DNA from: Perna viridis
Taxonomy: Eukaryota
Assembly: GCA_037379345.1 (NCBI GenBank)
Contig: CM074518.1
Location: 45,783,586 to 45,847,585 of the forward strand
Direction of reading: 5' to 3'
Length of the DNA stretch: 64,000 bases
The position numbers and the translations under genes were made by a program. The notes under the pieces were generated by a model. The model saw only the letters and a list, made by a program, of their open reading frames with translations. It did not search any database and was not told the origin of the DNA. Of the stretch, positions 6,595-57,899 are shown one piece after another (positions within the stretch are counted from its first letter, which is position 1; each line of letters opens with the position of its first letter).

Positions 6595-6787
6595 ATGGCA
6601 GCGGACCTTCTACCTTTCATGTCTTTAGTGGCTAATTTACGATGTAATCTGATACCACATGTACACAATCAGCATTATTTCTTTCAACCTTACAACGACG
6701 GAAAATATAAAGGGTACACTCTTCAATGTTGCCCTAAAGGGAAAGTGTTCATGGAAAAATACTGCAGTTGTCTCCCCCCATTCGCAG
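6595..6787 (+). CDS. Gene A putative first exon, Cys module (CNLIPH...LQCCPKGKVFMEKYCSC)
   Basis: ATG at 6595, phase-1 donor gtttgt at 6788; Cys spacing resembles the third chitin-binding-like module of both genes. Confidence 0.6.
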
Positions 6788-9700
6788 GTTTGTTTTCATA
6801 AATAATCTAATCTTAACTTAAAATATAGAAAATTAACCAAACTGACACGCATATACAGAAGTAAAGGAAAGGGATTTATTTTTCAATCTATATTTTTGTT
6901 GGCTGTTTTAAAAAAAATAAATATATATAATCCAACGTGTATATAAGCTCTTCTTTCGAAATTTCTTTTTTTAAATGATATTTTTTCTCATTTACACATG
7001 TGTGAACAAAATCGAAAACACTGCTTATACTGAATTATTTATAAATTAAGAAGTTTAATTGCAACGAACTAATGGATCACCTTGTCTCATCGAAATGATG
7101 GCGAGAAATCATGTCAGTGCTATAAATAAAATGAATTAAAATGTATTCAAAACGTATTTTAATAGTCATTAATATTAACATTTCCAGGTTTGTTATTGAA
7201 TGCATTCAACTTTTTAGATAAAACATTTGAACGACAATCCATGAGAACGAAACCAGTCAAAACCGCAATAATCTTAACATTAGTTTATGTATTCTTGTAT
7301 GTCAATCATCAGGGTATTATAAAACAAAGTACCGGTATAATGCCGACAGTGTATTCCAATAAATGCTATCCGTTTCATTCACGGGGAATGATTTAGAGGG
7401 GTAATAAAGTATATATTGGTCATAGTTTTCCTGGTCACTGGTTTAGTTTATGGCTCTAAATATGTCAGACCCCTTGAAACAGGAAAGGAGATTTTTTGTA
7501 ATGCATGATATGAGAACACGACGACAAGAATATTGTTTAATGAATAAATGTATCGCACAAGCACAACATGATATGGCATCACAAAGATTGTGAAGAATGA
7601 CAAGTACCGAACAATGGATGGCAGAAAACAAATCACATGATATAAAAGTTGTTGTTTTCCAGGCAGTGTTAAAAATATTTTTTGGAATTATCTAGTGAGC
7701 TTTTCAACGTGTCATAGTTTTCCTTTCCTCTTTCGTCTACCCCGGACTTCACTTTTTATGAGCAATTCGGCGGGTGCTCCCAGTTTTTAGTGGAGTCCGA
7801 GTTCCTCATTTGCTTTTGTTACTTTGTATGTTTTGTTTTAGTTACTTTATGTTCATTGTTGTGTATATCTGTTTTCCATGTCTTTTCTTTGTCCCTTGAC
7901 TACATTCTTTTGATTACCACTAGAACCTTTGTTTCCTTGATTACTCTTTCAGAAGTAAAATTGATAAAGTACATTTAGTTTTGTAGTATTTGGACATAAA
8001 CATATATTTGTAGGCTTTTTTTTAAATTAAAAAAATGCAAATAGGGCTCGTCAATACAAAATGATATTCAGCTTCGACACAATTTATATATCTTCATCTA
8101 TATTACAATAAAAATCAACTGCAACTGCAATATACTACCAAGTATATTTGACAAAAGACTGAAATTTAGATTACGTAAATATTTTTCATGTTCAAAGTTG
8201 AATTTACTTCAAGTGCAACTTTTCACAATCCCTTACAGATTCTTATTGATCATGGAAAAACTGTTTCTTGATTCTTAATTTGATCTATTCAAGATATATT
8301 TTACAGTTCCCTTGATTACTCTTTAATTGCATATCTGTAGTTTTAATATTCTACTAAGTGATGCACGCTATTCCTGAGAACAATCAGAAATAATTTCCAC
8401 AAATGAAGTTAAATAGTACAAATTGAGATACACACAGGCTTAGAAACAATGTTTCGGATTTAATATAAAGTCCGCAAATTTAAACAAATATTAATAAGAA
8501 GAAAATTAAATTTTTAAAAATGTTTTTGATATAATAAAGTTTCGTCTGTCGCCAAAACATCTACAATGCCCAATTAATATTGGAAATTGACAAACGATTT
8601 ACTAAAAAATGTTTTCCCAGTCGTAAAAAGCATTCATACGAAAATATTGTGCATACATCAATACAAAAACATAACCATTGTACAAAAACAAATACAAGGA
8701 ACAACATCGATTGAACGTAATTCATTTTCAAAGAATTCATTACATTGAAATTTATGTAAACAGGAATGCAGTACACATACAGAATAACATCGTGTATACA
8801 CCACCAATCTTATTTTTAAAATGGAGTTAATATGGTGAAAAATATTAATTCTTTTATATAAATTTTCCTTCCCAAGGTTCGGTCAATTGACAAATATGAT
8901 AAAGGGATTATGTTTGGCTTCTTACCTTGTGTTGGTCAGAACTCAAAGATAGAAAATTAACTAAATAATTTTGTTTTTTGATGAATTCGTAAAACCATCT
9001 CCCTTTAAAAGTGGATTAAAACTTTATTCATTTGATATGATGTATATGATAGTAATTCTGTCGTCGGTTCCTTTTTCTCTTGCGTCTACCCCGGACGTGA
9101 CATTTTATTAGCAACTAGGCTGGTGTTACTAGAAGCAGATGAGTTTTTTTGTTGAGTTTGGATTATTAATTTACTTCAGTTTCTTTGTACATGTTTGTTT
9201 TTACTAATTTAATGTGTGTGTATATTTCCCCTGTCTATTTGTTTATCCTTTAAATATGTTTTTTTTTAATTCCGCGTGAGTCTTTGTTTCTTTGATCACT
9301 CTTTTAACTTTATCAAAAGTTCGGTTATATGATGTATAGGTAATATTGTAATGAAAATGATTTTTGTCATATATAAAGCGACGATAATATAAGATTAATG
9401 AACTACATACATCAACTTAACTTAACATTAAAAACTTGATTTCCACACAATAAATATTTCTCTACAGGTTCTATTACGAAAATGTATATTCACTTGTGAT
9501 TTAAATCAGTTGTACAAAAATGGCTAAATAATATTCTTGTATATAGTTTAAGCACCAGTTGATTCGCCAGTAACATTTTGTTTGAGAACATAAGTTGATA
9601 TTGTCATTAAGTGTAAGGATAATAAACAAAAATATTGCGTTTGCAAAATAATAAAAAAACTATAGGGATACAATTCAAGACAGCCGTGGACAGACGTGGC

Positions 9701-12700
9701 GATCTGAGGGTCCGTAACATATGGTATGTAATTCCAGTCGGTAATATACAATAGGTCCCTGCCTTTAGTGTTTTCATTCCTTCAGCACTGTTATGGGTAT
9801 TAAAATGAAGTTATTGTTGTTTTTCATTTTATATTAATCATTGTATGAGTTCTACAACTGATTTCTGCCTATGGATTGACTATTGTACTAGAACTCGGTC
9901 TAGATAAACTAAAAGGACCATTTATCCTATAAATTCGAAACCTGCTCCTTTTAAAAACCAGACAGATCCTTTGATATGGCTGGTAGTAAATACATTTTAT
10001 GCCACCATTTTTTTTGTTTCAATGTTCACTTATTATGATGTCAGATAGAGCAGGGATTTTTCTGCTTTGAAAGTGGATTACTCGGAGAATAAGTTTAAAG
10101 TTCATAGAGAATTTAACCAAATTATGAGTAGCTTAAAGAGTTATTTTCCATTACTTCGGTATTATTTCATTTTATTTTCATAATTTCAGTTAATTACAAA
10201 TTAAAGCTCTTTTTTCAATTTCTAATTGATGATATTTTTTGAAAACATAATTTGCCATCCAACGCATGAGTACGCTCGTATTGACTTATTGGTCTTAAAA
10301 CTTTCAACAAGGTATATCAATAACAACTTTGTTAAACTAATAGGTAAGTTATTTCAGTAATATATCACAATGGATGACATTCTACTGGTTCAAGACTGGT
10401 ACATGTTCTACTCCTACACTTTGTTTTACAGGCCGCCGTCGAAGACCGGTTAATACTGTTCCATATAGTCCGAGTAAGTTAGATATTTATGGTCATTGGC
10501 CAGGCGAGATTTAATGTGGATGTTAGTTCAGAATAAGAAAAATCGTATTTTATCTTGTTTTGTGGATGTAAATGTATATTTCTAACCAGATTAAAAGAAC
10601 AACAACAGAATGCATGTGGTGTTAAAGGTTAAATTATTTTCTTAAAGACGTACGCATTTAAATTTACCACGAAATTGCTCATGTCGATATTGTAGACAGT
10701 CAACTCAAACACATACAAAACAGTGATAAACTGAAAAAACATAGTGGTCAACGCGACCAAATGAAAGTTAAAGTATTAAAACATAGTTCAGCTCTGTTAT
10801 TCAAAGATGGCACCGAAAAGAGAAACAACAATAGAAAAACAACTTGTACATTGAAAGCATTAAGCACACAGAAAATTGAGATAGTGTACAATAAGATTTA
10901 GGAACTGCTTTAAGTTTTGCTTTGACAAGATGCATGACGTGATTAAGTGTTTTGATTTATTATCGCTCATATTGTAATAACGTCTAAGTAAGAATGAATG
11001 TATAATTGTATTAAATTTCTTTTTTTTTCAGTGCCTTACATGAAATCCAAATCATCATCAAATGTGAATACATTGACAGACAACGCAATTCAGAATCAGC
11101 AAAGAAAAGTAAAAAACACAATTTCAAAGACAAGCAAAAATCTACACCAAAAGCTAAAACCATCAATCGTACCTAATGTTTACAATAAGTTAAAAAAAAG
11201 ATTTCCACCTTTGAACAAAAAACATTTCATCCAAAAGTATTCAATCAATAACAAAAGAAGGAAGCTTTTTCTTAATGATATAAAATCCCAAAGTAAGAAG
11301 TTCAGTAAAAAGTTAAAATTCTTCAAAAGTAAAGGAAACTTTAAACAAAGCAAAAAACAACCAAAAACAATGAATACTTTTCAAGAACCTTTTCTCCCCG
11401 TCTCCAGCATCGATTCCCGATTTAGTCTCGAAAGACAACAATTAGACTTTGTACGTAACAATATTGAAGCACGACTGTCGGATCGCCCATTTTTTTCAAC
11501 AAACAATTTCGGTGGTCATAATCAACGAACTTTTCAAAATACCATACCATTCGGTACAAATTTTAATTCCAATGGCGGTGGTAGCGCACTAGATCTGGAA
11601 GTATCACGTGATATTGCCAAGCCTGATGCAATCTTTGAAGTTTCTACCGACAACTTGTCTAATCAAGATACTCTAATTGACACGCGAACGAATGCCAATT
11701 CTCAAGGAAACGGTGATAATTTCGGTACTACCGGTGGCGTTGAAACTTTTAACGACCTTAATCTAAACAACAGGCTTGTCGGTGATACTTTCAATGGCCT
11801 AGGGGATTTAGGGATAGAAACATCAACAGAAAATACAGGCGGAATTGATACCCCGATGTCTGTAGGGGATAATGGAAGTCCAGGCGACCTTTTTATAGGT
11901 GACAATCAGCTACCTAGCTCTATTTTTGGGATCGACGGTAGCGCCTTTAGTGAAAACGTCAATCCTGGGTCAGCAGATCTAGGTATTGCTGAACAGACCG
12001 TCACACAATTTGGGGATGAATCGGCAGTTGGAATTGTAGATAACTCAAACCTGGACGGAATCTTTTCCGCCATTACGGGAACAGGAATTATCGGGAACAA
12101 TAAATTTGGTTCAATGATCAGTGATAGTTTTGGTAGCAGCGGTTCAGCCATTGGTTTCGATGGCAACAGTGGATTTCTCCCCTTACCTGATGGAAATGAC
12201 CCAACGGTAAAAAATGGAAATGCACCTAGTACAGAAAATATAGGATTTAGGTTAAAAGAATTCCAAAACATGAACAATAGAGAAAACAACTTTCAATCAG
12301 GTAAAAAGGATAAAAGTAGAAGCAGTCAAACTAGCAAACCAATAAAACATGTTTTGTTTTCTGGATTTGGTGCAAATGAAAATGCTTTCCTTAAGAATAA
12401 TGAAGCTTCAACTGCTCTTTCTGAAAAAGGAATAAATGTAGCTGGTGGAATTGCTAATTTAAAAGTAAATCCTAGTGGGAACATGAATTTGAAGAATGTC
12501 GGTGATAGCACGTTTCTACCGGTAGGAACAACCGGCATCATTAACAATAGTGAATTTAGGGCAGAAAGGCTTTCTCAAGTAAAGAAAATTGCACCAAATA
12601 TTAGAATTATAACCAGTGGCAACAATGATATCCGTGGTGTTACAGAAAAGACTATTATCCTGTCTAATACCAATGAAATACCAACTGCACCTCTCGCGGA

Positions 12701-15700
12701 TACAATGTTTCCTGATTTTGTTCCACCACAGCCTAGAATTCCAGTTTCATTGAAAAAACTAAAGCTTGAAATGGACAATCCTGTAGTAGCGGGATCTTTA
12801 AGAAAAACTAAACAAGAGATTAAAAAGCAAGAATCCCAGACATTAGTTTTCCAAGAGCCTTTGCCTGTTGGTAAGTAATATTAATATTATGTTATGCCTG
12901 ATGGTAAGTAGTATTAGTAGCACGTTATGCTGTGGGTACGTAGTATTAGTAGCATGTTATGTCAACTAGTATCCTTTCAGTTATTATGTTGATGGTAAAG
13001 TTCACAAATAAAGTAAAATGGTAAAGTCTAAAGGAATCTACCAACCAGCAAACTTAATGGGTATCGGATCGTCCAGTCATGACGATGCAGCACAAACAAA
13101 AATATATAAGTCTAAAGGTATTGTACAACTATACCGATAAAGATGTTAACACACTATAATAAAATATATATTGGGCAAAATTTTCAGTCAACAAATGACC
13201 TTCAATGCCTTAAATAAATTGAGTGTGTATGAAAGTAACCTAATCAGGTGAATACCTGTGACGTATAAAATTTTATCGACAGTTACAAAGATCTTGAACA
13301 TTGTGTTGTGTTGTGTGTTGATCTTCAATACTGAACTATAAAACTACAAATATTTACAAACACTGTTATAAGAAACTATACAAAATAGGAAAAACTTAAT
13401 GTTTTTTGTTACTTCCGTGTGGGTGTAAAACACGGAGTTCTTTTATCCAAAATCCCTCCCGTTTCACTCTCTGTAGATCGCTCCAGATCGTGTTTTGTTC
13501 CACGATGAAGATTTTCATTTTGTTCATTTTGTTGAAATCATCGAGGCAGTGGTTAGGTAATCTGAAGTGTTGACTCACTGGGAGTAAAGGCTTTTTTGTT
13601 AGGTCGCTCCTGTGTCCGTTCAAGCGCTTGTGAAAAGGCTGTTTAGATTCACCAACATATTGAAGGCCACAGATGGGACAGTGGAGCAAATATATTACAT
13701 TAGCACTCTTGCAGTGTACGTTGCAAAATATTTTGTAGCGTTTCCCGGTGACTGTGCTGGTGAATGATGACGAGTGGTGCATTTGGTTGCAACATTCACA
13801 CCTTTTGTCACCACATGAGCGACTCTCGCCTTGAGTCAAGTTGAGCTTAGATATTTCAGCCCTCACAAATGGACTACGCAAACTGTCTGGCTGTCTGAAA
13901 GCAATCATAGGTGGTTCAGGAAAGACTTTCGATAATGTTGAGTTTCTCTCGACAGAGGCCCAGTGCTCACGAATGGTGTTGTGGCTGTTTTTAAGGCAGA
14001 GGTGGTATGTTAGAACACAAGGGGTTCTTTTACATTTTTTCTTTGCCTTGTACTATAATAGACTACTTCTTGGGATATTGTGAATTGTTTGGAACCCTTC
14101 TTTGATGGTTTTGTATCTATATCCCCTTCTTCTTAAATTGTTCTTCAGTTGACCTTTTTTTAAGGATTCGTCATTTGAACAAATGCGTCTTAGCCTAAGA
14201 GCTTGACTAAATGGTATACATATATATATATGACATGCATCATTAATTTGATCCTCTATCCTACATAATAACACCTAGATGAACTGTCCCGTACTACCAT
14301 ACATCGTGTACTAAGTTACAGCCCTAGATCAATCCTACGAGATTGACCCGACCAGCGAAAGCTATATTTTTATATAGCCTAGCTGGCCGAGTTGTCTAGG
14401 GGGCTTGACTTAGTGCAGGCGGTGTTGCCATAGATGTCACAGCGGTACGAGTTCGAGTCCCGCGGAGGGAACGACCAAAAATTTGCATCGCAAATTTGAC
14501 AGTTCTAACATCGTTGAGAATTTTTCAGACCTTGGGACAAGTAAGATATGTAAAGTTAACTTTATTTACACTCTCTATTGCAATGGAATTGGTTATCTCC
14601 AACAGACAATGCATTCTTTAAAAGCATTATCTAAAACAACATTAAGGTTTCTATTTAGGTGCTTTTGAAATTTAAAAATAGCAATTAATTTTCTTTTTTT
14701 CTATCATAATCACACTTGTCTGGTTCTGATAAAAATAACTTAGATACAACTTCATAATTACTAGAAAATGAACTTTTTTATTATTGGATTAGTGTACTTT
14801 ATACGCTAGTATTAAGCATTGCCCTGAATTCCTGAACAGTTGTTTTTGTTGTCGTGTTGTTTTAGATATTTGTCATGGATGTAAAATGGATGGTGGTGTC
14901 GGCTATACGAATCATCCAACGTCATGTGACCGCTTTGTAGTCTGTTATCCGACATATGGAGGAACTATGAAACCAGTCACTCAACTTTGTCCCTATGGAT
15001 TATTTTGGAGCCAGTCTGCTCTTACTTGTAAATTGTCTAGAGACGTATATTGTCCGCACGGTAATAAATTTAAGTTGAATTTAAAAAGGTGTTAGGTACA
15101 TTTATCGAAAGTTTTGGAGAACATGATGTTACAACGTTTTGTATTGTTTCCAAATTGTGAAATTAAATAATTTTAAATGATATGTTACAAACCTGATGAC
15201 TCAAAATGAAGTCTTTCATAGAGGTAAACAGTAAAAATGAAATAATAACAAACAGTAGTCATCTCGATTGATATCTCCTATTTGAATACAGTAAGTGGTA
15301 CCGATAGAGGTAGAAATTAAACTTGGGTATAAAAAGAACAATTTTCGTTCGTCATATTATTAGCTAAATAGCCATTCAGTGGACAAGCCAGGTATAAAAC
15401 CCATAAAATCCGTACCCAGTAACTATATAATTATTAAACGAATTTACCCCATCGATGACCTACACATGCAGTCAAACTGGAAAAACAATGATAGTAATTT
15501 GACTGGGAATTGCTAAAACGGGGACCTGATATAAAATGCCGACCGTGTATATGAATAACATGGTTCGTCTCAACGTGGTGCTAATACTGGGAAGTTATAT
15601 TAGAGGTTTTTTTTCAGAGTAGGAGTAATTTCTGTTTCAGAGATCTGCAAGTTCCAATCAGACAAATACCAATATGCCAGTAGGCGTACTTGTCGATCGT

Positions 15701-18700
15701 TCTGGGAGTGTCAGGCAGGCAAATCAGTACCAAAATGTTGTCCCTGGGGATATTCCTTCCTGGATGGTATTGGCTGTATTGAAGACCCATCGTGTGAGAT
15801 TCCTGATATTGCCTGTAACTTGAATCCTAAGGATTATATCATTGAATGGGGAGGTAACTCAATTCCTGTTAAATATTCTTCCATATTGAAAAAGTAATTA
15901 TTGTAGTGAATATCAAAATAATAAAAATATTCACTTGTCAAATTGTGTTTGGAGACAATACATTTTTTAAGGTTGTTCTTTCACGAATAAACCTTTTCTC
16001 ACACTTTATTGTTATTATTGGTTTGCATATAAGGTGAAAAACAACAACAAACAAAAAACACTAGACATCTCAATACATCATGTGTCGATTTCTCAAAAAG
16101 TCGTGTGAAATTAATCGTACATTATGACGTCACAATGCTATTTTAGGTTGTGACGTCATTATTTACTTGCTTATCTACTTTAAACTTACGATTTTGTGAA
16201 ATTGACGCCTAAAGAATGAAAGGAGATAATGAGATATTATTTGTTTGTTTTCTTTTTCCATTTTTGATTTTTTTTTATAATTATTTAGCATTTAATATGA
16301 ATTATAACAGCATACAACACTTTGAAAGAAGTAGTGTATTAATGGTATAGTCGATCTTAGTTAATAAATGTCATGTCTTAAGTGCTATGAATATATGCCG
16401 TTTTTATAACAATAAAACCCTTTTCTTAATCTTTGTTTCATAGATAACCTTTTTCATCTCAACTTTGAATTTTATATAACGAAAATTGGAAATAATGAAT
16501 ATGTCAAAGAGACAAGAATTCCACGGGAAAGAAAAATGACAGCCCGAGGCCACCCATGGGTCTCCAATAAACGACGAGGAAACCCGCAGACCACAGGCCA
16601 GGCTGCAGCTTGTCCCAAAACAATATTTTACACAAGTACAGGGAGATAGTTGCCCCTATATACTCAGCAACATAAAAGTATACAGAAAGCGAAAACGTTA
16701 TATTGATTAAATATCGGTAAAAAAAAAACCAAGGCGTTAACAATGGGATAATTCAGATACGTAAAAAAATACAAAACATGGCCTAAACGTTAACGTACTG
16801 TTGATTACTCACCAAAGTCTCGTTACATTAATGTAACAAATGTTAAGCTGGCCAAATATCTTCAAGGGGTGTGTGATAAAAGACAAATCGTTGGCAAGAG
16901 AGGTGAATATGAAAGAAGGCTGGGTACTTTCTGGGTAAAGGAAAACTGTCCACCAGGATGGATGTATCAGATTGAACTGTGTGAATGCACAAGAATATCA
17001 GAATTAGAACCACCAACATATACCTTTGAAGGACACAGTGAGTTAAGTTCATACAATATAATCACCTTCGTTTCTTATTAACGATAGTTTTCAAGTTTAA
17101 GACGGTCAGAACTAACCGCAATTTTAGTATTTTTGCATATTTCAGAATAAGAGGACCGCTTCAGTTATATCACTTTGTTCAATACGATGCAAAATTTACG
17201 GTATATTCTTGGATAGAGATTATACACAACACGTTGAATGATACTTGGTGTTTCTTTCTGTGAGAAGGTTAGTTGAAAATAGTTTTTACGTAATACAAAG
17301 AAAATCCGATTAATCAGTTTTAGATATATTGATTAGTTGTATATGTAAGTTTGTTTCCATTTTTGTCATGTAATATATATTTCATTTCAGCGTGTGTCCC
17401 CGAGGTTTATCTCCCTTTCACCACAGATTTCTTAGACTATTCCGGAAACAATGTTTATGTTAGAGTTGACAATGCTAGCCTATCTTCCGGTGCAGCATGC
17501 TTTGATGGAAAGAGCGCACTTGCTGTACCAGCATTTGCAAATATGGATTATGGAGATACATTTTACCTTCACGTACGCTATAAACAGCGTAACCCCGGAA
17601 ATGACCTTCAGACCCTTGTTTTTAACGGAGACTGTGAGAAACGTCATTCTTTTATGCTAGGAACAAAATCAGTTGGGAATTATCTTTCTTTAGTCAGTAG
17701 TTTAAATGAAGAAAAGAAGATGTCAGTGAAATCAAAGGTAAATGAGTAAAATTATATTCATATACTCCAATGTCCTGACTTAATTCAGTCTAAACAGTCT
17801 AAATGTGTTCGTACCTTTTACACAAGCAGTATATATCCTGCCTATTATGCTAACGTTTAAATATTTGACCCAGAATACTACCTACCAAATCTGGTTTATG
17901 TTGCAGTTCAAGGCGGTAGGATTTCTCTATGGTTTTTAGTTATATTATTCAATTTGTCTCAACTTCACTTTTATATTCTTCCTATGTTTTGAATATTTCA
18001 TTATTAAGTTCTAGACTATACATATAACACTGGCGTTAAGCTACTTGAATTAGATAACGTAGATTTTCAGTATTCGTAAGTACTGAGTATTTAGTCATTG
18101 TCAACTTGATTTTTCATGATTAGGTATTGATCTAGAATTGAGTGATGACAATGAATAGTAAACGGTAATAAATTTAGGTACGAGTATTTTCCAAAGTCAA
18201 AAGAATTCATTTTAAGATCCACAATTACCCGAGTTACAGTGCATATCATTAAAACAGTGTCCGGTTTAACAAAGATTCGATATGGACTATTTTCATTTTT
18301 TTCAGCTTTAAATGAAATCAATGGAAAAATATTTTAATCAGAACTTTGATTTAAGACATCATTATTCTGAAAACGTTAACAGTATGTGGCGTTTAGGTTG
18401 CATATACTTAAAGAAGCTGATGCTATAAATAAGGTTAATTTTTACGATAATGGTCTGAACGATTTACTAGATCTTAAGTTTGCTAAAATAGTAATATCAA
18501 TGATCAAAGAAATGATTGTATTTATTTGAAGAGGATATCTAACGATAAATTAATTTTTCCACGAAGCACAAATAATACCTATATACATTTATGTATAAAA
18601 ACGTATCAAATGGCTCAGGATACTACAAACATAAAACGAATACATTTACTGGTTTTCAAGAAGCAACTAAATTATTCATCTACTTCTACGACTATACTTG

Positions 18701-21700: not shown

Positions 21701-24700
21701 AACATAAAGTAATTAAAATTATACATACAAAGTAACAAAAGCAAATGAGCAACTCGGACTCCACTAAAAACTGGGAGTGATATCAAATGTGGTCGAAACA
21801 TTTCTCTTAATTAATTTAAAAAAGCAAAATACGTTGTCGCAAGTCCTTATATGTATCTTTTCTCTTCATTTTGACTGTCAACACATGATGAGCTTGAAAT
21901 TTCATAAATATAAATGTATTGGTTTTCATTAAAAGCCAGCACCATTCATGAGTTTTAAAGGTTCAAATGAAATTTTCTATTTCTCCGAAGTTTTACTTTG
22001 AATAGTAAATATAACAATTTATGCTATATACAGTTCTACAAATACGAAATACACAAGTTTTACCAGTAAGCGAAATAAATGCTTCGCACATAAATATCGA
22101 GAACAAATGCTTGCTTGTTTATTTCAATACAAAACCTCGTGAAACATGATTGGGCAATATAACCGTGTATTTGCGCCGAAGCCATGTAATCATTTCCGGA
22201 AAGGAACTGAAGAATTCCAAAATTGACGCCGTAAACATTACCAAGTCGACAGATGCAGATAATTAACAAATACATTTTATTTGATGTTTAAACTGCCAGA
22301 TGGATAGTATGCAGATGATATAAAATGTATGAATTACAATAATACTTGAATTAATGAAGATAAATTTGAATGTAAGATGTAAATGAACTTGTTCTAATTT
22401 TGTTGACATTTTGTCGATATTAGAAATTGTTCATATCAAATGAATTTCTTAAGGAATGCATTTTGTATGTACAGGCACACAAAGATGGCTGAAATATTCA
22501 TTAGAGTTAACGCGTTAGTGAAAGTTCGTGCTATATAATAGCTGTGCGGAACAAATTTTAATGCACTAATCCTATATTATCAAATTTGTATTTAATAAAA
22601 CCATATTGGTTTTAAGGATTTTGCACTTGAAAATGGCTTATCCTCGTGATGGTGATATTAATATTTGAACTGAGTCTACTTAGCATTAAACACTTTCTAT
22701 TCGGCTGTAACTGTTTCATGTCCCTATATTAATAGAAAAAAGGAAAAGAGAACAACAAATGCATCATTTATAAAAACAATAAATACTTACAGAGATCACC
22801 AAAAGGTCTTCAATAAGTGTAAAAACACCTTTAAGTAAGCTCTGAAAGGTCTCGACTTTAAAAGTAATAAACCTCATGGTAATAGAATGATGACACTTAT
22901 TCAAAATAAATTCAAAAGTCAAATAACGACACGAAAACACATACATGACTGTGGACAGGTGCATGTCAGCAGTGGGGATTAAACTAGTTTTATAAGGCCT
23001 TAACAAACCCCTTTTATATAAGGTCAAAAATAAACTGAAACAAAAAATAAAACACACGATAAAATTCACTCAGTAATATATCCCATTCCTCGTCATGGAA
23101 TACCTCATCATGGAACATTTCTATAGACAAAATGGGATATTAATTAAAAAAAAAAAGCTGGCGCTCACTAAAAAATAGCTCAGAACATATTCAAGAGTTA
23201 TCAAGGGTACCGAGATTCTAGCGGATAACTTCTGTAGTGATGACTTCAATCTTCTACAATAAGTATATTTAAGGTGTATTATCTGTGGGTTATGCATTTG
23301 GTTGTTTTACTTGATTTTTTAATATCTGGCTAATTAGTTTTAATGCTTTTATGGTCTCATCACCGTTTTTTTTTAATTTTTGGAGTTGTCGATACGACTT
23401 AACGATACACTTTTATCAAATGATCTAATCATATTAGATATTACTAATTATGTTCACGGAATGAGAAACAAGTAGTCTAAAGGAAAGAGATATAAACTAC
23501 ACGGACAAATGAGGAATAATATCTGAATTTTAACATTGTAGAAAAAAATAACAGACTGGAGGGATGTTTGGATAAAGTTTGAGAGGGGAGAACTTATTAT
23601 ACAATCCAATGACCACACCGAAATGATGCCGATGAAAGGTAAGAAGACTTCTACAAATTATAACACTTACATGGTGTCAATTGAAAGATTTGAATTGACG
23701 TCTACAACCCAATGACAATTTTAAAATGATGCCAAAGACGTATATATTCGTATGAAAGTTTTATTTAATATTCTGGATCATAGTAAAGCACATCGTATAC
23801 TTTTCAGTCCATTTTTTGTCTAAAAAATTGAAAACAGTTCAAAATGGCAATGAAATAAAATAATTTTGTAGTTATTTGTAACTAACGATTAATCATTGAG
23901 CTAACACTCATATTATATACCCGTTTTTGTTTCAATACCAATTCACGACAATGCAAGTCGTTTTACGAGAAGCAGAATTACCGCATGTGGTTTGTTTATT
24001 AAATGTAAGAAAAAAGTAAAAAAAAAATAATACTCAAACGATGAATTTTTCTATTTGCTCTCTACTTGTATTTAAAGCTGTTATTCAAACCGTTGTCGAG
24101 CTTCGGATGCTACCTTAAGTTCACGACCGTTACTGTTTACAGGAAAGGTGTAAAAGGACTTACATATATTTAAAAAATATGTGTAGAAGCTCTACAGCTG
24201 AAGGTGCATTAATTTTACTTTCAAATCAAAGAAAATCATAAATCAGAATTGTTAGGAAACGGAAATAGAAAAGGTGTTCCGAAATATTTCAAAAATGCAT
24301 TTCAAAACCATAAAACTATTCAATTGTTTAAATCTGTGCAATCAAATAACCGCACCAAAACAATGACGCCGCTAAATTGAAAGTTGTTTGTTAGTTGGAG
24401 CCAGTATTGCAAACAATGTGGGGATAAATCATTTTTATTTTGATCAATTATATTTTAATAAGTGCAAGTATGCAGAAATGGTTAAAGGATTTAAATGAAT
24501 CATGTTTTGAAAACAAATTTTGACAACAAACTTTCAACCAATTGAAACATTAACATGTAGACACTATATACAATGTATTAGGGCATAAATAATATTGTAC
24601 GTATATACTTATGACAGTACATACAAGTTTTAAGTCATATTTAGTTTCATTGTGTATTCTGAGGTGTTTATTTCCTTTGCACATTAAATTCGTTTGAAAG

Positions 24701-27700
24701 ATATTATTTACATGTTTATACAACTCTTTTTCCTTATACATGTAAATGAAACTTAATAAATTTAATTCTTTAATACCATAGTGCTCTGTTGCAGATAAAA
24801 AAGGACTGTTATCTATGTTTCTCTTGTTCATCCGCCCCGTGCAGGTCCGGGTGTTAAAAGAATAGGCCTGCAGCAGCGCTAAGCTTGTCGTATAAGACGA
24901 CTAAATAGTGCTCAGAAACCTAGCCGGGGGCTAGGCGCTCTGCCCACAGAGCAACTGGGATGTGTCCCCCAGGTGGTGGAATGGGGTACCCCTGGCGTGT
25001 TACATGCTGGGGTTGTCAGGCTATAATACGGAAAACCTGACCGCAAACCATAGTGGTGCACCGTGTTGGGAAAGATGCCACCTTCCTCGCACGTTAAAGA
25101 ACCCTGCTGTGGTATTCGATAGGAGTAGGAACCTTTGCGCTCCGTCACAGGAGGCTAAATTGCCCGATCTTACCCATCCCCCCTTTTCCGAGTGGCAATC
25201 AAAATTTGTCGACCCTATTATCCTTGTGACCTATCCTTTTCTTTCATTTCATGTTCATCATATCATCCATTTCATGTTCATTGTCTGAATATAGCTGAAA
25301 TATTGCTGCTCGGACGTTAAACCCCAACAAACAAACAAACTTGTTCAACCTGTTTGTTATTTTACGATTGGTAGAAAATTGAAATCGTTGATTAGTTTTC
25401 TATTTGTCAGTTCGTATCTTGACACTTTTTGTGTCATTTATCCTTTGCAAATTGAAGCCTTGCAACTAAAATTCAAATAATACTGGTAGTAAATACCTAT
25501 TGTACCAGCTGGAAAGTATCTTATTGTCTTCCCAAACTTCTGCCTATTGTACCAACTGGAATGTATCCTATTGTACCAGATGGAAAGTATCCAATTGTAC
25601 CTGCTGGTATGTATCCTATTGTACCAGCAGGTATGTATCTTATTGTACCAACTGGAATGTATCCTATTGTACCTGTTGGAATGTTCCTATTATACCAGCT
25701 GGAATGTATCTTATTGTACCAGCTGGTATATATCCTATTGTACCAGCTGGAAGGTATCCTATTCCCTCCCAAACTTCTTCCTATTGTACCAACTGGAATG
25801 TATCATATTCCCTTCCCAAACTTCTGCCGTATTGCCCATGCATTGTCCTATTACGTCGGAAACATATTCAATTTGTAAAAGTTATTTAATATGTTCTCTT
25901 TGTTTAGCTTTCCTTCATGAGCATTGAAACAAAACATCTCAAACATTGCAAAATATAAAAATCTTTCCAGAACTCTTCAACCTTATAAATATTCTAAAAA
26001 ATAAATGAAAAGACGTATTAAAACAAAATAAAATAAGTTACAATAGTGAAAGAGAACCACATAGTGAGCATCCACATGGAAATTACACATGGCTTATTCT
26101 AATTAAATCCTGTTGCACCTGCATATAGAGTTTTTCATATTGCAACTCAAACGTTATACCAGAGCATACCGAAACCACGTGAACTTTAAGTACCGCGCTA
26201 GAGTTCTCACAATTAGGCTACTGGAACAGGGTAATGTTTTTTATGCTGCCCATTTGTGTTTGAACATTTCGAGAAAAAAAAACAATCGGAATGGAAGCAA
26301 AATGTTAAGCGCGCTATAAAACCAGGTTAAACCCACCTTTCATTTTGAAATGCCTGTACCAAGTCAGGACCATTGCGATGATTTCCAAATGTCGGTTTTA
26401 CCCTGATATTGTCATTTGTTATACTGACTTCCTTTTTGGCTGTTTGACTACTGTTATGACTGCCAGTTCGATATTTTTTTTCTTACCCTTCATTTGCTAT
26501 AGGATTAAAGCCATCATTACTAATGTTTTCTGTAGGTCATATAACTCGTTGGTCATTACAGTGTATTTATCTGCACAATGAGAACCGATTTGTTCACCGT
26601 GTTTTTCTTTTCATCTTTCGTCCACCCCAGCTTGCTCTACCGGTGTACCTGATTGGTGTTTAGTTTTTAGGAAAGTCCATCCTGTGCTGCTCATTTACGT
26701 TTGTTCTTTTGGTTATTTCCTGTCTTTGTTGTTTGCGTCTACTTTTTATGTTCAGTCGTTATCCCTGGTCTATATTATTTTCTTTTAATTATCGTTCTCT
26801 TGGGTTTCCTTCCCATATTCTAGTCGCCATATAGTAATGGTGTAAAAGAAAAGTATTCGATAAACTCGGTATATTTTATTACAATAGGTGCCATAGCAAG
26901 GTCAGAGTGTGGCATGAAGATTGGCTGGGGAAAAGGATTTAAAAACTTTGTTGGCTGTATTGACGAGGTATGTTACCATTACTGTAGTAATTTGATAAAG
27001 ATGTATTGTGGTATGAACGATTCTAAGAATATAAATACAAAAACAATCATATAAAAAAGAAAATATAAGGCAGAAACTGTAAACGAAACATTGTTTTATG
27101 TAAAAAATGATTATTAAAATTGTTAAGTATTTGCAGCTACTCAAATCTTAAAGCTCAAGATTAAAATTTACTTTCGTCATTGGAAGGTTGCATTCAATAG
27201 ACATTTAATAATGCTGTATAATGTGTAAAAGTTTACAATTTGAAGGAATAAATGTTTTGTTTGTTGTGCGGTAGGACGACCTACCATCATTTTAGTAGGT
27301 ATTTGATACAAATAGCCAGTAAATTTATTTGCCAAATGGATTAAAACTTTTGCCGAATCTGTTTGTCGCTGGCTTGTCACCGAGCAGTCTAGGGTTAGAT
27401 TTTCAGGGGCTAAAATATAATTTTGCGAGTCAAATCAACCTTTCCCGTTACATTGCATTGAATGAATTGATCTGATTGGAATTAAATGTGATGATACTTT
27501 TTTTTTATATATATTTAGTATTATCAATATAACTAAACGTGTTTTTGTACGTATTCTGTCATTCAAATATTAGACAGCGGTTCATAAAGAAAAGCAACAT
27601 TGTCATAATAAGTTCAGAAAAACTCCAACGATGAAATAATACTTCATATAAATCAAAAGCTAATTTAAAATTAGAATTGTCGATACCTAGCATGTATTAC

Positions 27701-27828
27701 CTGTACAACGAATGTGTTTCTAAGAATCAATTATCGAACCCTGTAACAAACGTCTCAAATAAGCGGGTTTTTTTTTTGCTTTCCAGATTTCAATACATAG
27801 ATGTCAACCTTCAAGAAAAAAAAACTAG
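6595..27828 (+). CDS. Gene A: Pif/LamG3-like chitin-binding plus laminin-G shell-matrix-type protein without VWA, with a large low-complexity domain (exons 6595-6787, 10432-10473, 11032-12870, 14866-15060, 15641-15853, 16867-17037, 17391-17737, 23542-23638, 26888-26967, 27787-27828; about 1072 aa)
   Basis: All junctions are GT-AG with compatible phases and sum to 3219 nt, open to a stop. The C-terminal half aligns module by module with gene B. The first exon is less certain. Confidence 0.78.
7703..7948 (+). mobile_element. Naiad-type PLE 3' end fragment with an internal deletion
   Basis: Homologous to the other copies; ends in cttgattactctt. Confidence 0.75.
9066..9303 (+). mobile_element. 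degenerate Naiad-type PLE 3' end fragment
   Basis: gtctaccccggac ... ttgatcactctt similarity to the family 3' UTR. Confidence 0.55.
10432..10473 (+). CDS. Gene A 42-nt micro-exon (GRRRRPVNTVPYSP)
   Basis: ttgttttacag acceptor, gtaagt donor, phase 1 to 1. Confidence 0.7.
11032..12870 (+). CDS. Gene A low-complexity exon (Lys-rich block, then Gly/Asp/Asn-rich block)
   Basis: 626-codon ORF; polypyrimidine acceptor ending at 11031, gtaagt donor at 12871. Confidence 0.88.
13396..14215 (-). mobile_element. Penelope-like retroelement fragment: RT thumb, Cys linker and C-terminal GIY-YIG endonuclease
   Basis: IPFSQALRLRRICS; CGDKRCECC; NVIYLLHCPICGLQYVGES...RLNGH; REGFWI..L....PHG. Frame-broken; lies in a gene A intron. 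Confidence 0.88.
14376..14530 (+). mobile_element. tRNA-derived (Pol III A/B box) repeat head
   Basis: A-box-like tggccgagttg at 14384 and B-box gagttcgagtcc at 14449; no intact cloverleaf seen. Confidence 0.55.
14866..15060 (+). CDS. Gene A chitin-binding type-2 (peritrophin-A-like) exon
   Basis: DICHGCKMDGGVGYTNHPTSCDRFVVC...CPYGLFWSQSALTC; 195 nt, the same size as gene B exon 4. Confidence 0.9.
15641..15853 (+). CDS. Gene A second Cys-rich chitin-binding-like exon
   Basis: EICKFQ...CRSFWECQAGKSVPKCCPWGYSFLDGIGC; tttcag acceptor and gtaact donor; not in the ORF track. Confidence 0.87.
16485..16690. repeat. fragment resembling a bivalve non-autonomous Helitron-type repeat
   Basis: GC-richer block gagacaag...ggccacccatgggtctcc...gcagcttgtccc; recognised only by recalled resemblance. 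Confidence 0.35.
16867..17037 (+). CDS. Gene A third chitin-binding-like exon
   Basis: VCDKRQIVG...WVKENCPPGWMYQIELCEC; gtgagt donor at 17038. Confidence 0.85.
17391..17737 (+). CDS. Gene A laminin-G (concanavalin-like) domain, first exon
   Basis: CVPEVYLPF...DYSGN...ACFDGKS...LVFNGDC, typical of Pif-family LamG. Confidence 0.9.
19752..19830 (-). mobile_element. 3' end fragment of the CR1-type LINE family found at 53370-57840
   Basis: gattgggcagcaggctaagcc is shared with 53404-53424. Confidence 0.6.
20778..21295 (+). mobile_element. Naiad-type PLE, 5'-truncated copy
   Basis: RT C-terminal remnant plus the 3' UTR ending cttgattactctt. Confidence 0.8.
21606..21778 (-). mobile_element. Naiad-type PLE 3' end fragment
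   Basis: Inverted copy of the 3' UTR, starting aagagtaatcaagg. Confidence 0.8.
23542..23638 (+). CDS. Gene A LamG exon (KKITDWRDVWIKFERGELIIQ...)
   Basis: ttgtag acceptor, gtaaga donor, phase 0 to 1; parallels gene B TGNWNEAYYVHDG. Confidence 0.75.
24831..25339 (+). mobile_element. SINE-like retroelement, copy 2, with (CAAA)n tail
   Basis: 8-bp TSD cttgttca (24823-24830, 25340-25347); homologous to 3504-4007. Confidence 0.85.
25496..25830. repeat. 24-bp minisatellite (cctattgtaccagctggaatgtat) with interspersed variant units
   Basis: About 11 standard units plus 3 cctattccctcccaaacttct-type units. Confidence 0.9.
26888..26967 (+). CDS. Gene A LamG exon (GAIARSECGMKIGWGKGFKNFVGCIDE)
   Basis: LamG C-terminal IG...F.G.ID motif; phase 1 to 0; gtatgt donor. 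Confidence 0.85.
27787..27828 (+). CDS. Gene A terminal exon (ISIHRCQPSRKKN*)
   Basis: ttttccag acceptor; parallels gene B VAIYLCRP; AATAAA at 27939. Confidence 0.8.
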   Translation: MSIHRCQPSRKKN

Positions 27829-49538: not shown

Positions 49539-49671
49539 NNNNNNNNNNNNNNNNNNNNNNNNNNNNNNNNNNNNNNNNNNNNNNNNNNNNNNNNNNNNNN
49601 NNNNNNNNNNNNNNNNNNNNNNNNNNNNNNNNNNNNNNNNNNNNNNNNNNNNNNNNNNNNNNNNNNNNNNN
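49539..49671. other. assembly gap (133 N)
   Basis: run of N. Confidence 1.
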
Positions 49672-56300: not shown

Positions 56301-57840
56301 ATAATATCATGGTCGACAGCTTCAATCAAGTCAATCTTAGGTAGGAGACTACAAACATTGTTATGAACAATGGATATATTTTTTAAGTGGATGGAAGATG
56401 GTGGTCATGGATTTGGTTGTATCCCTTGTCTTACAAGTAGATAACCAATAATATATAATACAAAGTCATTAGTGTTATAGTGATGATAAAGTATGGTTGA
56501 ATGACACACTCTTAGTGAACACTTACCAGTAAACTTTACTCTAAGACTAATCATAACTATCAAAACTGAAAAATTTAGACATTGCTGAAAGTGACCATAT
56601 AAACCGGATTATAAACAATACAAAATAATATGATCTATAACCTAATTGACAATAAACGTACATCATGCCCACTTGTTGAGTAAACTATTCATTTAAATAT
56701 ATAATAACTAAATAAACATATTTACACAAACAAACAATTGAAATAAATTCATGTATATTGATTGAAGATAACATATATCTTCAAAAATATAGCCATGATT
56801 GTGCTGTTATTTTAGATACACATATTTGATAATAGGTTAGATCAATATTGTTTTGTTACTAAATATAGAATAACACGTGTTGAGAAGCACATGGTGTTGT
56901 TTACAACTCAGTTCATTCGAAATTGTAATATAAAAACTATGTAGAGTTAATACAGCTGATGAATCAGACTATTTTTTGTCTTTTTGGTTATCAAGAGTCT
57001 CCTTCGTCGACATTTGGTTGTACGTTTATATTCAGTGGTGGAGTTTGAACAGATGCCACATTTTGATCATCCGGGGAGTCAACATCGATATTTTGGGTTT
57101 CAGGTTCCCTGACTACTTTGGCATACGACTTTGGCTTGACCTCTTCCTCGCGAGTTTTTGCAGGTTTGTTTTTAATTGGCAAAATTGGCTGAAAATGTAA
57201 CTCATTTGGGCGTGTACACATAATAATTTGATCGTTTTTGTGTTTGATGAAGATCTTGCCATCAAAAGTCCATGTATCTTTTATGTGATCTTTGTTTCTT
57301 AGCCATCGAGCGTTATATGCTAGTTCTGATCTTTTCCTTGTGAGATCTTCATACACAAGATAGCTTGTTCCATTTTCCTTGTTGAAATCGTGCATGATCT
57401 TTTTGGCACGAAGCAACTTCTGACGGCTCTTATAAGACACAAATCCAGCTATTATTTCACGTTCTTTAGTATTGTCAGTATCAGATCTTGGTGGACCCAC
57501 TCTATGTGATCTATCAATTTCTTCTGGTTTTAATTCTACTTTTAGAATTTTCTGAGCGAATATTTCATCATCAGTGCTCTCTCTCTCTTTTTTTTCAGGA
57601 ACGCCTGCAATGCGTATTGATTGGCATTTTCTGTACTGTTCTAGATCATCATTTGTCCATTCAATTCGTAGCATTTTTGTTCAAATTCTTTTAGCTTCTC
57701 CGTCATCAATTTGACATTTTCACGTGCGGAGTTAAAATAGAGGATACTTGTTTATCTAGTAATGGAAGAAGATGTCAAACTATTTTGGATTTAATGTAAG
57801 GTATTTCACAGAGCGATTCAACGAACTTGTCCATTACACT
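53370..57840 (-). mobile_element. degenerate near-full-length CR1-type LINE (ORF1 56991-57674; ORF2 APE-RT-ZnF fragments about 53994-56440)
   Basis: ORF1 LEQY...IRIAGVPE...IDRSHRVG...YEDLT; ORF2 HNNVCSL/ITESH, GPDGIS, NYRP.SL, GVPQGSVLGP, LFADDT and a terminal Cys finger; many frameshifts. Confidence 0.9.
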
Positions 57841-57899
57841 CTGTTCGCTTAACAAACCAAGTTATTCCGCCTCGTAGCCAGACAGGTACAGACAGATAG

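What the first reader, a model, noticed from the sequence alone, without database searches (positions are those of the whole stretch)
6595..27828. VWA-less Pif-like protein with a very large charge-blocked disordered domain
Seen: gene A shares the chitin-binding x3 plus LamG C-terminus of gene B. In place of the VWA and Thr linker it has an extra Cys module, an RRRR micro-exon and a 613-aa exon with no Cys or Trp. Known: Pif/BMSP proteins are VWA-ChtBD2-LamG shell-matrix proteins, and in pearl-oyster Pif the charged low-complexity Pif80 part is C-terminal. Inference: an independently evolved low-complexity module placed N-terminal to the chitin-binding core, a candidate new biomineral or chitin-scaffold protein architecture.
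Basis: partly seen in the sequence, partly recalled or inferred. Interest (0 to 1): 0.75.

Follow-up and report, generated by a model that had tools for sequence, protein, structure and literature searches.

The report
Mussel chitin-binding protein with disordered head
This is an intact mussel gene for a chitin-binding, lectin-tailed matrix protein that carries a 610-residue floppy segment where its relatives carry a VWA domain; the layout is real, but it is already predicted in other mussels and belongs to a described protein class.

Summary
Gene A (6595-27828, + strand) is a 10-exon, 1072-codon gene with GT-AG introns and consistent phases. It encodes a 5-Cys module, a 42-nt RRRR micro-exon (refined to 10432-10473), a 613-codon exon without Cys or Trp, three CBM14-type modules and a complete ConA/LamG-like domain. 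No VWA-like sequence lies in window 1-30000.

The novelty claim is only partly supported.
- Predicted proteins of four Mytilus species, RefSeq models in three, have the same layout. One M. galloprovincialis isoform skips exactly the 14-residue micro-exon.
- An oyster protein groups with the folded core and also has a Cys-free basic head.
- VWA-less ChtBD2x3-Laminin_G_3 proteins ("LamG3/Pif-like") and low-complexity regions N-terminal to the chitin-binding domains are already described.
- At least three other ChtBD-LamG loci in this genome have their own giant Cys-free exons upstream and no VWA-like frame of 110 aa or more in the 20 kb read. This scan noted such a cluster earlier on another piece of the genome (s1-771665).

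The long exon is predicted disordered (pLDDT 33.7) and evolves much faster than the folded parts. Three RNA runs gave essentially no reads, so splicing and tissue remain unshown in this species. Function is inferred: a chitin-anchored matrix protein with a polyampholyte payload.

The parts
6595..6787 (+). Exon 1: ATG, weakly hydrophobic N-terminus, 5-Cys module; ends in phase 1 (donor GTTTGT)
   Evidence: tblastn to M. edulis P0005 residues 1-65, 57% identity, E=2e-22. Splice and phase table. Single copy in the genome. No Pfam family at E<=1.
10432..10473 (+). Exon 2: 42-nt cassette micro-exon encoding (G)RRRRPVNTVPYSP; phase 1 to 1
   Evidence: Acceptor AG and donor GTAAGT read directly. Same length and position as the 14 residues present in M. 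galloprovincialis isoform X1 and absent from X2.
11032..12870 (+). Exon 3: 1839 nt (613 codons including the split ones), no Cys or Trp, rich in N/S/G/K; basic block followed by an acidic block; predicted disordered
   Evidence: tblastn to P0005 147-777, E=4.7e-37. 3 hits (2 true relatives) among 1.84 billion representatives. AF2 mean pLDDT 33.7 with 0 of 612 residues at 70 or above. Single copy in the genome.
14866..15060 (+). Exon 4: first chitin-binding module (CB1, CBM_14)
   Evidence: Pfam CBM_14 7.9e-7, 29.5 bits against a cut-off of 22.1. 84-85% identical to P0005. 38% identical to gene B 37576-37782.
15641..15853 (+). Exon 5: second, degenerate chitin-binding-like module (CB2)
   Evidence: Pfam CBM_14 E=0.0084, below the cut-off. 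67-68% identical to P0005. 36% identical to gene B 38287-38403.
16867..17037 (+). Exon 6: third Cys-rich module (CB3-like)
   Evidence: 64% identical to P0005 915-972. 39% identical to gene B 38509-38577. No Pfam hit at E<=1.
17391..17737 (+). Exon 7: first 115 residues of the LamG/ConA-like domain; phase 1 to 0
   Evidence: 71% identical to P0005 973-1087. 10 matches of this exon in the genome, itself and gene B among them. Structure of the orthologous domain.
23542..23638 (+). Exon 8: middle part of the LamG-like domain
   Evidence: 73% identical to P0005 1088-1120. Splice table.
26888..26967 (+). Exon 9: C-terminal strands of the LamG-like domain (GAIARSECGMKIGWGKG...CIDE)
   Evidence: 82% identical to P0005 1120-1152. 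Splice table.
27787..27828 (+). Exon 10: 13-residue tail (ISIHRCQPSRKKN) and TAG stop
   Evidence: Read directly. Matches the Mytilus tail VSIHRCHPEVTVNKS. Splice table.
36191..39263 (+). Context, neighbour gene B: VWA exon (36191-36826), Thr-rich linker (about 37044-37265), CB modules (37576-37782, 38287-38598), first LamG-like exon (38904-39170)
   Evidence: Pfam VWA 4e-25 and CBM_14 1.6e-7. Thr-rich frame. Paralogy to gene A.

Best explanation
Gene A is an intact, single-copy, 10-exon gene. It encodes a protein of about 1072 residues built on the mollusc 'three chitin-binding modules plus LamG3/ConA-like lectin domain' chassis shared with Pif/BMSP-type shell-matrix proteins. It belongs to the VWA-less branch of that kind.

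It is the counterpart of uncharacterised predicted proteins in Mytilus (for example LOC143082597). For the folded core it also matches Saccostrea LOC133185170.

Proposed mechanism (inferred):
- The protein is secreted.
- The C-terminal chassis anchors it to chitin or another polysaccharide.
- The N-terminal exon of about 610 residues is Cys-free and disordered. A Lys-rich block (+29 over 120 residues) is followed by an Asp/Asn/Gly/Ser/Phe-rich acidic block. It projects from the fibre as a polyampholyte payload that recruits charged matrix partners or ions, or forms a hydrated gel. In VWA-bearing relatives that partner-binding role falls to the VWA domain.
- The 42-nt micro-exon is a cassette. 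In this species it carries RRRR, a possible proprotein-convertase site.

Shown here: gene structure, domain identities, fold of the tail, predicted disorder, orthology, rate difference. Inferred: secretion, chitin binding, matrix or shell role, cleavage.
For: - Gene model: canonical GT-AG at all 9 introns and consistent phases; CDS 3219 nt.
- Collinearity: all eight window exons that tblastn found align in order with P0005 residues 1-1152. The micro-exon and the tail exon match by position and length.
- Same layout in 5 of the 6 Mytilus models aligned: the four full-length models with the Cys module, plus truncated P0003. P0009 has a different N-terminus.
- Isoform X2 lacks exactly the micro-exon.
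- CB1 passes the Pfam cut-off, CB2 is sub-threshold and CB3 is undetected. PMC11291548's Fig. 2 legend likewise sorts the family's CBM_14 matches into three grades by e-value (CBM_14, CBM_14L1, CBM_14L2).
- Tail: AF2 pLDDT 89.1, pTM 0.86. Foldseek E=1e-9, TM 0.75-0.78, to the lectin-like sub-domain of clostridial toxin receptor-binding regions and NTNH. VIA-align Z=18.4 to a carbohydrate-binding domain of an arabinanase, 14.7 to neurexin LNS, 13.2 to laminin LG.
- Long exon: pLDDT 33.7, with 0 of 612 residues at 70 or above.
- Rates: the long region is 34% identical between the window and M. edulis, against 64-88% for the folded exons. Between M. edulis and M. coruscus the figures are 74.6% and 95.5%.
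- Conserved islands among the mussel sequences, for example EPFLPxxSID...LDFxxNxIExRL and EKTxxLSxTxxIP...PxIPxSLxK.
- Tree: gene A with Mytilus 93/93, then with the oyster protein 87/90.
- Chitin-binding plus Laminin_G_3 proteins without a listed VWA occur in a mytilid shell proteome (PMC6641155, table passages).
Against: - No transcript evidence in this species. Three raw RNA runs (19-25% of each read) gave depth 0 on every exon bin of 10300-16299, apart from traces of 0.19 and 0.09 in one bin (11300-11499). All substantial coverage fell on the intronic repeat 12900-14699. None of the 18 small runs guessed to be RNA holds the exon's words.
- The N-terminus is only weakly hydrophobic and starts MAAD. 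A signal peptide was judged by eye only.
- The RRRR is not conserved: Mytilus has HQTRG, HQPRG or HQSWG.
- The mussel and oyster long regions show no significant similarity (best E=0.2 and 2.1). Conservation of the payload beyond mussels is therefore positional and compositional only.
- The disorder call rests on a 6-sequence alignment.
- No chitin-binding, shell-proteome or localisation data exist for this orthogroup.
- Placement inside the published LamG3/Pif-like clade was not tested.
Confidence: 0.65

Rival explanations
1. Same gene and protein, but not a biomineral protein. It would be a chitin-associated extracellular matrix or mucin-like protein of a non-shell structure such as the gut lining, gill skeletal rods, periostracum, byssus gland or a larval-only structure.
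For: - CBM_14 is the peritrophin-A domain.
- LamG3/Pif-like genes persist in shell-less octopods and are highly expressed in arm epithelia of argonauts (passages).
- Essentially no reads in three RNA runs of unknown tissue.
- No paper or shell proteome text names these accessions.
Against: - Related ChtBD2+Laminin_G_3 proteins are found in mytilid nacre and myostracum.
- Its paralogue family is the Pif/BMSP shell-matrix family.
- Nothing here measures tissue, so this rival is simply untested.
Confidence: 0.25
2. One reading: gene A is a local tandem duplicate of the neighbouring VWA-bearing gene B, in which the VWA and Thr linker were replaced by a newly evolved low-complexity module. That would make it a lineage-specific new architecture.
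For: - The two genes lie about 8 kb apart on the same strand.
- They share the exon plan and 36-44% identity in four patches.
Against: - On the LamG-exon tree, gene A groups with Mytilus (93/93) and an oyster protein (87/90), not with gene B.
- In the own-genome search, four other loci match the LamG exon with better E-values than gene B, at 38-40% identity against gene B's 41%.
- The oyster relative already lacks VWA and has a Cys-free basic head.
- The tree uses one 115-residue exon and its backbone is unresolved, so an ancient tandem origin is not excluded.
Confidence: 0.1
3. In this species the locus is silent or decaying, or the long frame is not part of the mature mRNA, for example a retained or unrelated open frame.
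For: Depth zero on all exons in three RNA runs, and no RNA holder among the listed runs.
Against: - A 626-codon open frame has chance probability about 1e-18.
- All exons are intact with canonical sites and matching phases.
- Both ends of the exon are conserved with Mytilus, and the join ...EPLP(V/T)|DIC(H/L)GC is identical in position to that of the full-length Mytilus models.
- No frameshifts or stops.
Confidence: 0.08

Closest known systems
Mytilus predicted proteins: LOC143082597 isoforms X1/X2 (XP_076114458.1, XP_076114459.1, M. galloprovincialis), XP_071120170.1 and CAG2232534.1 (M. edulis), XP_063400773.1 (M. trossulus), CAC5395142.1 (M. coruscus, truncated)
   Same: Same order of parts: 5-Cys module, 14-residue cassette, Cys-free region of about 700 residues, CB1-3, complete LamG-like domain, short tail. 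Collinear with the window exon by exon.
   Different: The long region is only 34% identical over 518 alignable columns and is about 90 residues longer in Mytilus. There is no RRRR in the cassette. All are named 'uncharacterized' or 'unnamed', and none is studied in any paper I could find.
LamG3/Pif-like proteins (Argonauta, Nautilus, Pinctada, Lymnaea and others; bioRxiv 10.1101/2021.07.10.451900, passages read)
   Same: No VWA. Three consecutive ChtBD2 modules followed by an uninterrupted Laminin_G_3-type domain. Treated there as a third group beside Pif and BMSP.
   Different: As described there, they consist of a signal peptide, ChtBD2 x3 and LamG3 only. Gene A adds a 5-Cys module, a cassette micro-exon and a disordered region of about 610 residues in front. 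Clade membership was not tested here.
Pif (Pinctada fucata Pif97/Pif80) and BMSP (Mytilus galloprovincialis)
   Same: Chitin-binding modules followed by LG sequence, and a charged low-complexity region in the same protein.
   Different: Pif has one VWA and BMSP has four. Their low-complexity regions lie almost exclusively inside the LG domain, between its N- and C-terminal parts (zone 4). Both are cleaved into two proteins. Gene A has no VWA, an uninterrupted LG domain and an N-terminal low-complexity region with no sequence similarity to them that I could detect.
PifN and PifS1 subfamilies of Pif/BMSP (PMC11291548, sections 12-13 read)
   Same: A long low-complexity insert directly N-terminal to the chitin-binding modules (zone 3) or at the N-terminus (zone 1). 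Neighbour gene B, with its Thr-rich linker, fits the zone-3 description.
   Different: They keep the VWA domain, which defines the family in that paper.
Sibling loci in the same genome (C8:33.08 Mb; C9:35.58-35.60 Mb; earlier finding s1-771665)
   Same: A single giant Cys-poor exon (601, 1742 and about 1880 residues) lies upstream of a ChtBD-LamG chassis, with no VWA-like frame of 110 aa or more in the 20 kb read. One exon ends ...FQEPLAPS, like gene A's ...FQEPLPV.
   Different: Their long exons differ in composition (S/T/N-, Q/T/S- and V/Q/T/D-rich) and did not match gene A's exon in the own-genome search. Two carry a clear signal peptide within the exon. None has the 5-Cys module. Their gene models were not built and the frames were not scanned against Pfam.

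Membership tests
Pif/BMSP family as delimited in PMC11291548 (VWA-domain clade) | At least one VWA domain | tested here: not met
   No Pfam VWA in any gene A exon tested or in orthologue P0005. tblastn of gene B's VWA exon against window 1-30000 gave best E=2.1.
Pif/BMSP family as delimited in PMC11291548 (VWA-domain clade) | CBM_14 chitin-binding module(s) downstream | tested here: met
   CB1: 29.5 bits against a cut-off of 22.1. CB2: E=0.0084.
Pif/BMSP family as delimited in PMC11291548 (VWA-domain clade) | LG domain sequence after the CB modules, usually split by an insert | tested here: met
   The LG-like domain is present but uninterrupted: 189 residues, pLDDT 89.1, ConA/LamG-like fold. 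The split form is described.
LamG3/Pif-like (VWA-less group) | Three consecutive ChtBD2 modules | tested here: inconclusive
   CB1 passes Pfam, CB2 is sub-threshold and CB3 is not detected. All three align with gene B's Cys-rich modules. SMART was not available.
LamG3/Pif-like (VWA-less group) | Laminin_G_3 (PF13385) domain at the C-terminus | tested here: met
   By fold. By sequence only sub-threshold: Laminin_G_3 23.6 bits against a cut-off of 27.6 in oyster P0017, and Laminin_G_2 E=0.041 in P0005. Atlas neighbours are all Laminin_G_3 at score 0.89, a lead only.
LamG3/Pif-like (VWA-less group) | Absence of VWA | tested here: met
LamG3/Pif-like (VWA-less group) | Signal peptide (secreted) | not testable with these tools
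   No signal-peptide predictor was available. The N-terminus MAADLLPFMSLVANL is weakly hydrophobic (read by eye).
LamG3/Pif-like (VWA-less group) | Falls in the published LamG3/Pif-like clade | not tested
   No named reference sequences of that clade could be fetched.
Intrinsically disordered or low-complexity shell-matrix region | No stable fold, biased composition | tested here: met
   pLDDT 33.7, with 0 of 612 residues at 70 or above. N 12%, S 10%, G 9%, K 8%, no C or W. Caveats: shallow alignment, and 26% of residues are I/L/V/F/M.

The most novel reading that the evidence does not exclude
Pteriomorph bivalves keep a set of genes in which one conserved chitin-anchoring chassis (CB x3 plus LamG3) is fused, always through a single giant phase-1 exon, to unrelated and fast-evolving disordered 'payloads'. 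Gene A would be the oldest traceable such fusion, shared by mussels and oysters. Its payload keeps short conserved motifs (FxEP(F)LP, LDFxxNxIExRL, EKTxxLS...IPVSL) that act as docking sites. A 42-nt cassette exon, which in this species encodes RRRR, would switch a convertase cleavage that releases the N-terminal 5-Cys module. That would make the family a natural system of chitin-tethered, exchangeable polyampholyte brushes rather than a set of VWA-based scaffolds.
Probability: 0.2. Interest if true: 0.55.

Novelty: new variant of a known kind. Interest (0 to 1): 0.3.

Why it matters
Classifications of the Pif/BMSP shell-matrix family start from the VWA domain, so VWA-less relatives with large disordered heads are left out by design. 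This orthogroup is conserved across mussels. An oyster protein matches its folded core and its general plan. It shows that the chitin-binding/LamG chassis is reused with very different N-terminal payloads. If the protein is in the shell or periostracum, its charge-blocked tail with a few conserved motifs would be a tractable model for how disordered regions are tethered to chitin during matrix assembly. As things stand it is an uncharacterised member of a described class, not a new kind of system.

Tried and rejected
1. RNA evidence. One read-laying run on 10300-16299 with three raw RNA runs and one DNA run showed essentially no exon coverage, so it tests nothing about splicing.

2. Search with the long exon against 1.84 billion representatives. 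It gave 3 hits: one spurious low-complexity bird protein (P0001) and two true relatives.

3. Atlas search of the disordered region gave no usable hit.

4. Profile of five full-length relatives against PDB sequences. The only hit was a CBM14 fungal effector at E=0.18, and no LG hit by sequence. I therefore used structure prediction.

5. Pfam on single exons found no LamG.

6. Cys module against CB2 gave no alignment. Against CB3 it gave a 19-residue match at E=0.019. I do not call the module a chitin-binding domain.

7. Mussel against oyster long regions showed no significant similarity. I do not claim the payload itself is conserved beyond mussels.

8. Accession search in papers found 0 papers. 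Supplementary tables were closed. Those of PMC11291548 (S5-S7), of the Perna viridis proteome (PMC6641155) and of the M. coruscus proteome papers could list this protein, and I could not see them.

9. The word-index protein searches returned very few relatives. Their blanks say little.

10. I considered an 'FG-repeat-like' reading of the central block and dropped it. The window has only 11 FG/GF dipeptides and the Mytilus sequences have 3-5.

Exons were handled one by one, and the natural Mytilus and oyster proteins served as full-length proxies.

Full report
WHAT IS THERE. The window is AT-rich eukaryotic DNA (GC about 0.29-0.39) with many repeats. On the + strand between 6595 and 27828 lies a complete gene. 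I defined its exons from three sources: open frames, splice sites read directly, and tblastn of natural relatives against the window.

The ten exons are 6595-6787, 10432-10473, 11032-12870, 14866-15060, 15641-15853, 16867-17037, 17391-17737, 23542-23638, 26888-26967 and 27787-27828. All nine introns are GT-AG. Phases are consistent from ATG to TAG, and the coding length is 3219 nt, that is 1072 codons plus stop. I checked phases by arithmetic and did not join the exons.

THE LONG EXON.
- The open frame 10998-12875 has 626 codons. At the window's stop frequency (0.064) such a frame has probability about 1e-18.
- The exon (11032-12870) has a polypyrimidine/AG acceptor and a GTAAGT donor.
- Its 612 whole codons hold no Cys and no Trp. 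They are rich in Asn (71), Ser (61), Gly (54) and Lys (51).
- Residues 1-120 carry net charge +29 and residues 201-400 carry net charge -23.
- AlphaFold2 with a six-sequence alignment gives mean pLDDT 33.7, with no residue at 70 or above. It shows only low-confidence helices in the Lys-rich block and at a conserved motif. This fits disorder, with two caveats: the alignment is shallow, and 26% of residues are I/L/V/F/M.
- No Pfam family matches.

THE MICRO-EXON. Its donor must be the GTAAGT at 10474, giving 10432-10473 (42 nt, phase 1 to 1). A shorter exon ending at the first GT would break the frame. It encodes (G)RRRRPVNTVPYSP.

RELATIVES.
- A full HMMER scan of 1.84 billion representatives with the long exon found 3 proteins at E<=0.001. 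One is a spurious low-complexity bird protein. The others are a single-exon fragment from an unnamed ENA contig (P0002) and Mytilus coruscus CAC5395142.1 (P0003).
- P0003 led to M. edulis CAG2232534.1 (P0005, 1161 aa). Its 90%-identity cluster holds RefSeq models of M. galloprovincialis (LOC143082597, isoforms X1 and X2), M. edulis and M. trossulus.
- P0005 is collinear with the window. Identities are Cys module 57%, long region 27-34% with many gaps, CB1 84-85%, CB2 67-68%, CB3 64%, and LamG pieces 71-88%.
- In the alignment of six Mytilus models, isoform X2 lacks exactly 14 residues at the position of the micro-exon. The 42-nt exon is therefore a modelled cassette there, and the window's copy has the same length and phase.
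- The window's organism is, by these identities, a mytilid outside the M. edulis group. This is an inference.

THE FOLDED PARTS.
- CB1 passes Pfam CBM_14 (29.5 bits against a cut-off of 22.1). CB2 is sub-threshold (E=0.0084). CB3 is not detected. The Fig. [quoted passage not shown]
- The tail was not recognised by Pfam on single exons. It is only weakly recognised in full relatives: Laminin_G_2 at E=0.041 in P0005, and Laminin_G_3 at 6.5e-5 (23.6 bits against a cut-off of 27.6) in the oyster relative.
- I folded the 189-residue tail of P0005 with a 15-row alignment that included the window's exons 7 and 8 and nine other LamG-exon matches from this genome, gene B's among them. The result was pLDDT 89.1 and pTM 0.86, an all-beta sandwich.
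- Foldseek matched the lectin-like sub-domain of clostridial neurotoxin receptor-binding regions and NTNH (E=1e-9, TM 0.75-0.78).
- The Foldseek-independent search gave Z=18.4 to a carbohydrate-binding domain of an arabinanase, 15-16 to sialic-acid-binding CBM40, 14.7 to neurexin LNS, 13.8 to agrin LG and 13.2 to laminin LG.
- The tail is therefore a complete, uninterrupted ConA/LamG-like domain.
- The N-terminal 5-Cys module has no Pfam match and is single-copy in the genome. It shows only a 19-residue resemblance to CB3 (E=0.019).

NO VWA. Gene B's VWA exon finds nothing in window 1-30000 (best E=2.1). The Mytilus and oyster relatives have none either.

GENE B. It has VWA (4e-25), a Thr-rich linker, CBM_14 modules and the first LamG-like exon.

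HOW OLD, AND HOW UNUSUAL.
- A region search with the CB-LG core of P0005 found Saccostrea echinata LOC133185170 (P0017, 733 aa; 40% identity over 98% of the core). Its first 341 residues are Cys-free and basic, with no VWA and no Cys module in that model.
- An unnamed Logan protein (P0018) is a 1069-residue, Cys-free, strongly basic single open frame. Its C-terminal part matches P0017's head.
- A tree of the first LamG exon had 13 rows and kept 118 columns. It groups the window with Mytilus (93/93) and then with the oyster protein (87/90). Gene B and the other paralogues fall outside on an unresolved backbone. No rows were left out; L005 is short.
- The mussel and oyster long regions show no significant similarity. 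What is shared beyond mussels is the plan, not the sequence.
- Within this genome the LamG exon has 10 matches. Upstream of three of them (C8:33.08 Mb; C9:35.579 and 35.595 Mb) lie Cys-poor open frames of 601, 1742 and about 1880 residues, with no VWA-like frame of 110 aa or more in the 20 kb read. Four others show VWA-like frames; two of these also have long inserts of 399 and 700 residues, and one a 394-residue acidic frame upstream of the VWA. I did not run Pfam on these frames or build their gene models.

LITERATURE.
- PMC11291548 (sections 12-13 and passages read) defines the Pif/BMSP family through VWA. It describes low-complexity regions in four zones, including upstream of VWA and between VWA and CB, and describes the LG domain as usually split by the insert.
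- bioRxiv 10.1101/2021.07.10.451900 (passages read) describes VWA-less 'Laminin G3/Pif-like' proteins with three ChtBD2 and one Laminin_G_3. It treats them as a third group found across conchiferans and in shell-less octopods.
- The Perna viridis shell proteome paper (table passages read) lists ChtBD2+Laminin_G_3 and ChtBD2+LamG proteins in nacre and myostracum.
- A search for six accession numbers of the Mytilus relatives found no paper. Supplements were closed.

EXPRESSION. Three raw RNA runs of the same species label gave depth 0 on all exon bins of 10300-16299, apart from traces (0.19 and 0.09) in one bin. Their reads fell on the intronic repeat at 12900-14699. The 18 small runs guessed to be RNA hold none of the exon's words. 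This neither supports nor refutes the model, and tissues are unknown to me.

VERDICT. The architecture, however, is not new. It is predicted in four Mytilus species, an oyster relative has a comparable plan, it belongs to a described VWA-less class, and it is one of several similar genes in this genome.

The most likely function is a secreted, chitin-anchored matrix protein whose disordered polyampholyte head replaces the VWA as the interaction module. This is inferred from domains only.

Noticed in passing
window 13396-13908 (- strand), inside intron 3 of gene A; repeat spans about 12900-14700: A 170-aa open frame that looks like the GIY-YIG endonuclease of a Penelope-like retroelement (by eye, not tested). 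This stretch has very high summed DNA word depth, and it is where nearly all of the reads from the three RNA runs fell.
   Followed up: partly
   Followed up: no
window 56991-63546 (- strand): A run of long open frames (227, 243, 278, 615 and 228 aa) that look like gag, reverse transcriptase/RNase H and integrase of an LTR retrotransposon (by eye; no family search run).
   Followed up: no
window 25456-25927: A short-period tandem repeat open in all three + frames (IVPAGMYP-like units), inside intron 8 of gene A.
   Followed up: no
window 11375-11400 and 12845-12870; L024 near 5850: The motif F-x-E-P-(F)-L-P occurs twice in gene A's long exon (TFQEPFLPV near its start, VFQEPLPV at its very end) and at both places in Mytilus. 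A similar FQEPLAPS ends the unrelated 1742-residue exon of a paralogue on contig C9. It could be a shared linker or docking motif.
   Followed up: partly
P0011 versus P0006 (M. galloprovincialis LOC143082597 X1/X2): The two RefSeq isoforms differ only by the 14-residue cassette. In the window the homologous cassette carries RRRR, a possible convertase site that Mytilus lacks.
   Followed up: partly
P0002 (unnamed ENA contig, 861 aa): A third version of the long exon, from an unidentified relative. Its centre is filled with His-rich repeats (GHSQHT-like), while both conserved ends are kept. This shows how freely the middle of the exon is remodelled.
   Followed up: partly
window 49539-49671: A run of 133 N (assembly gap or mask), left untouched.
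   Followed up: no
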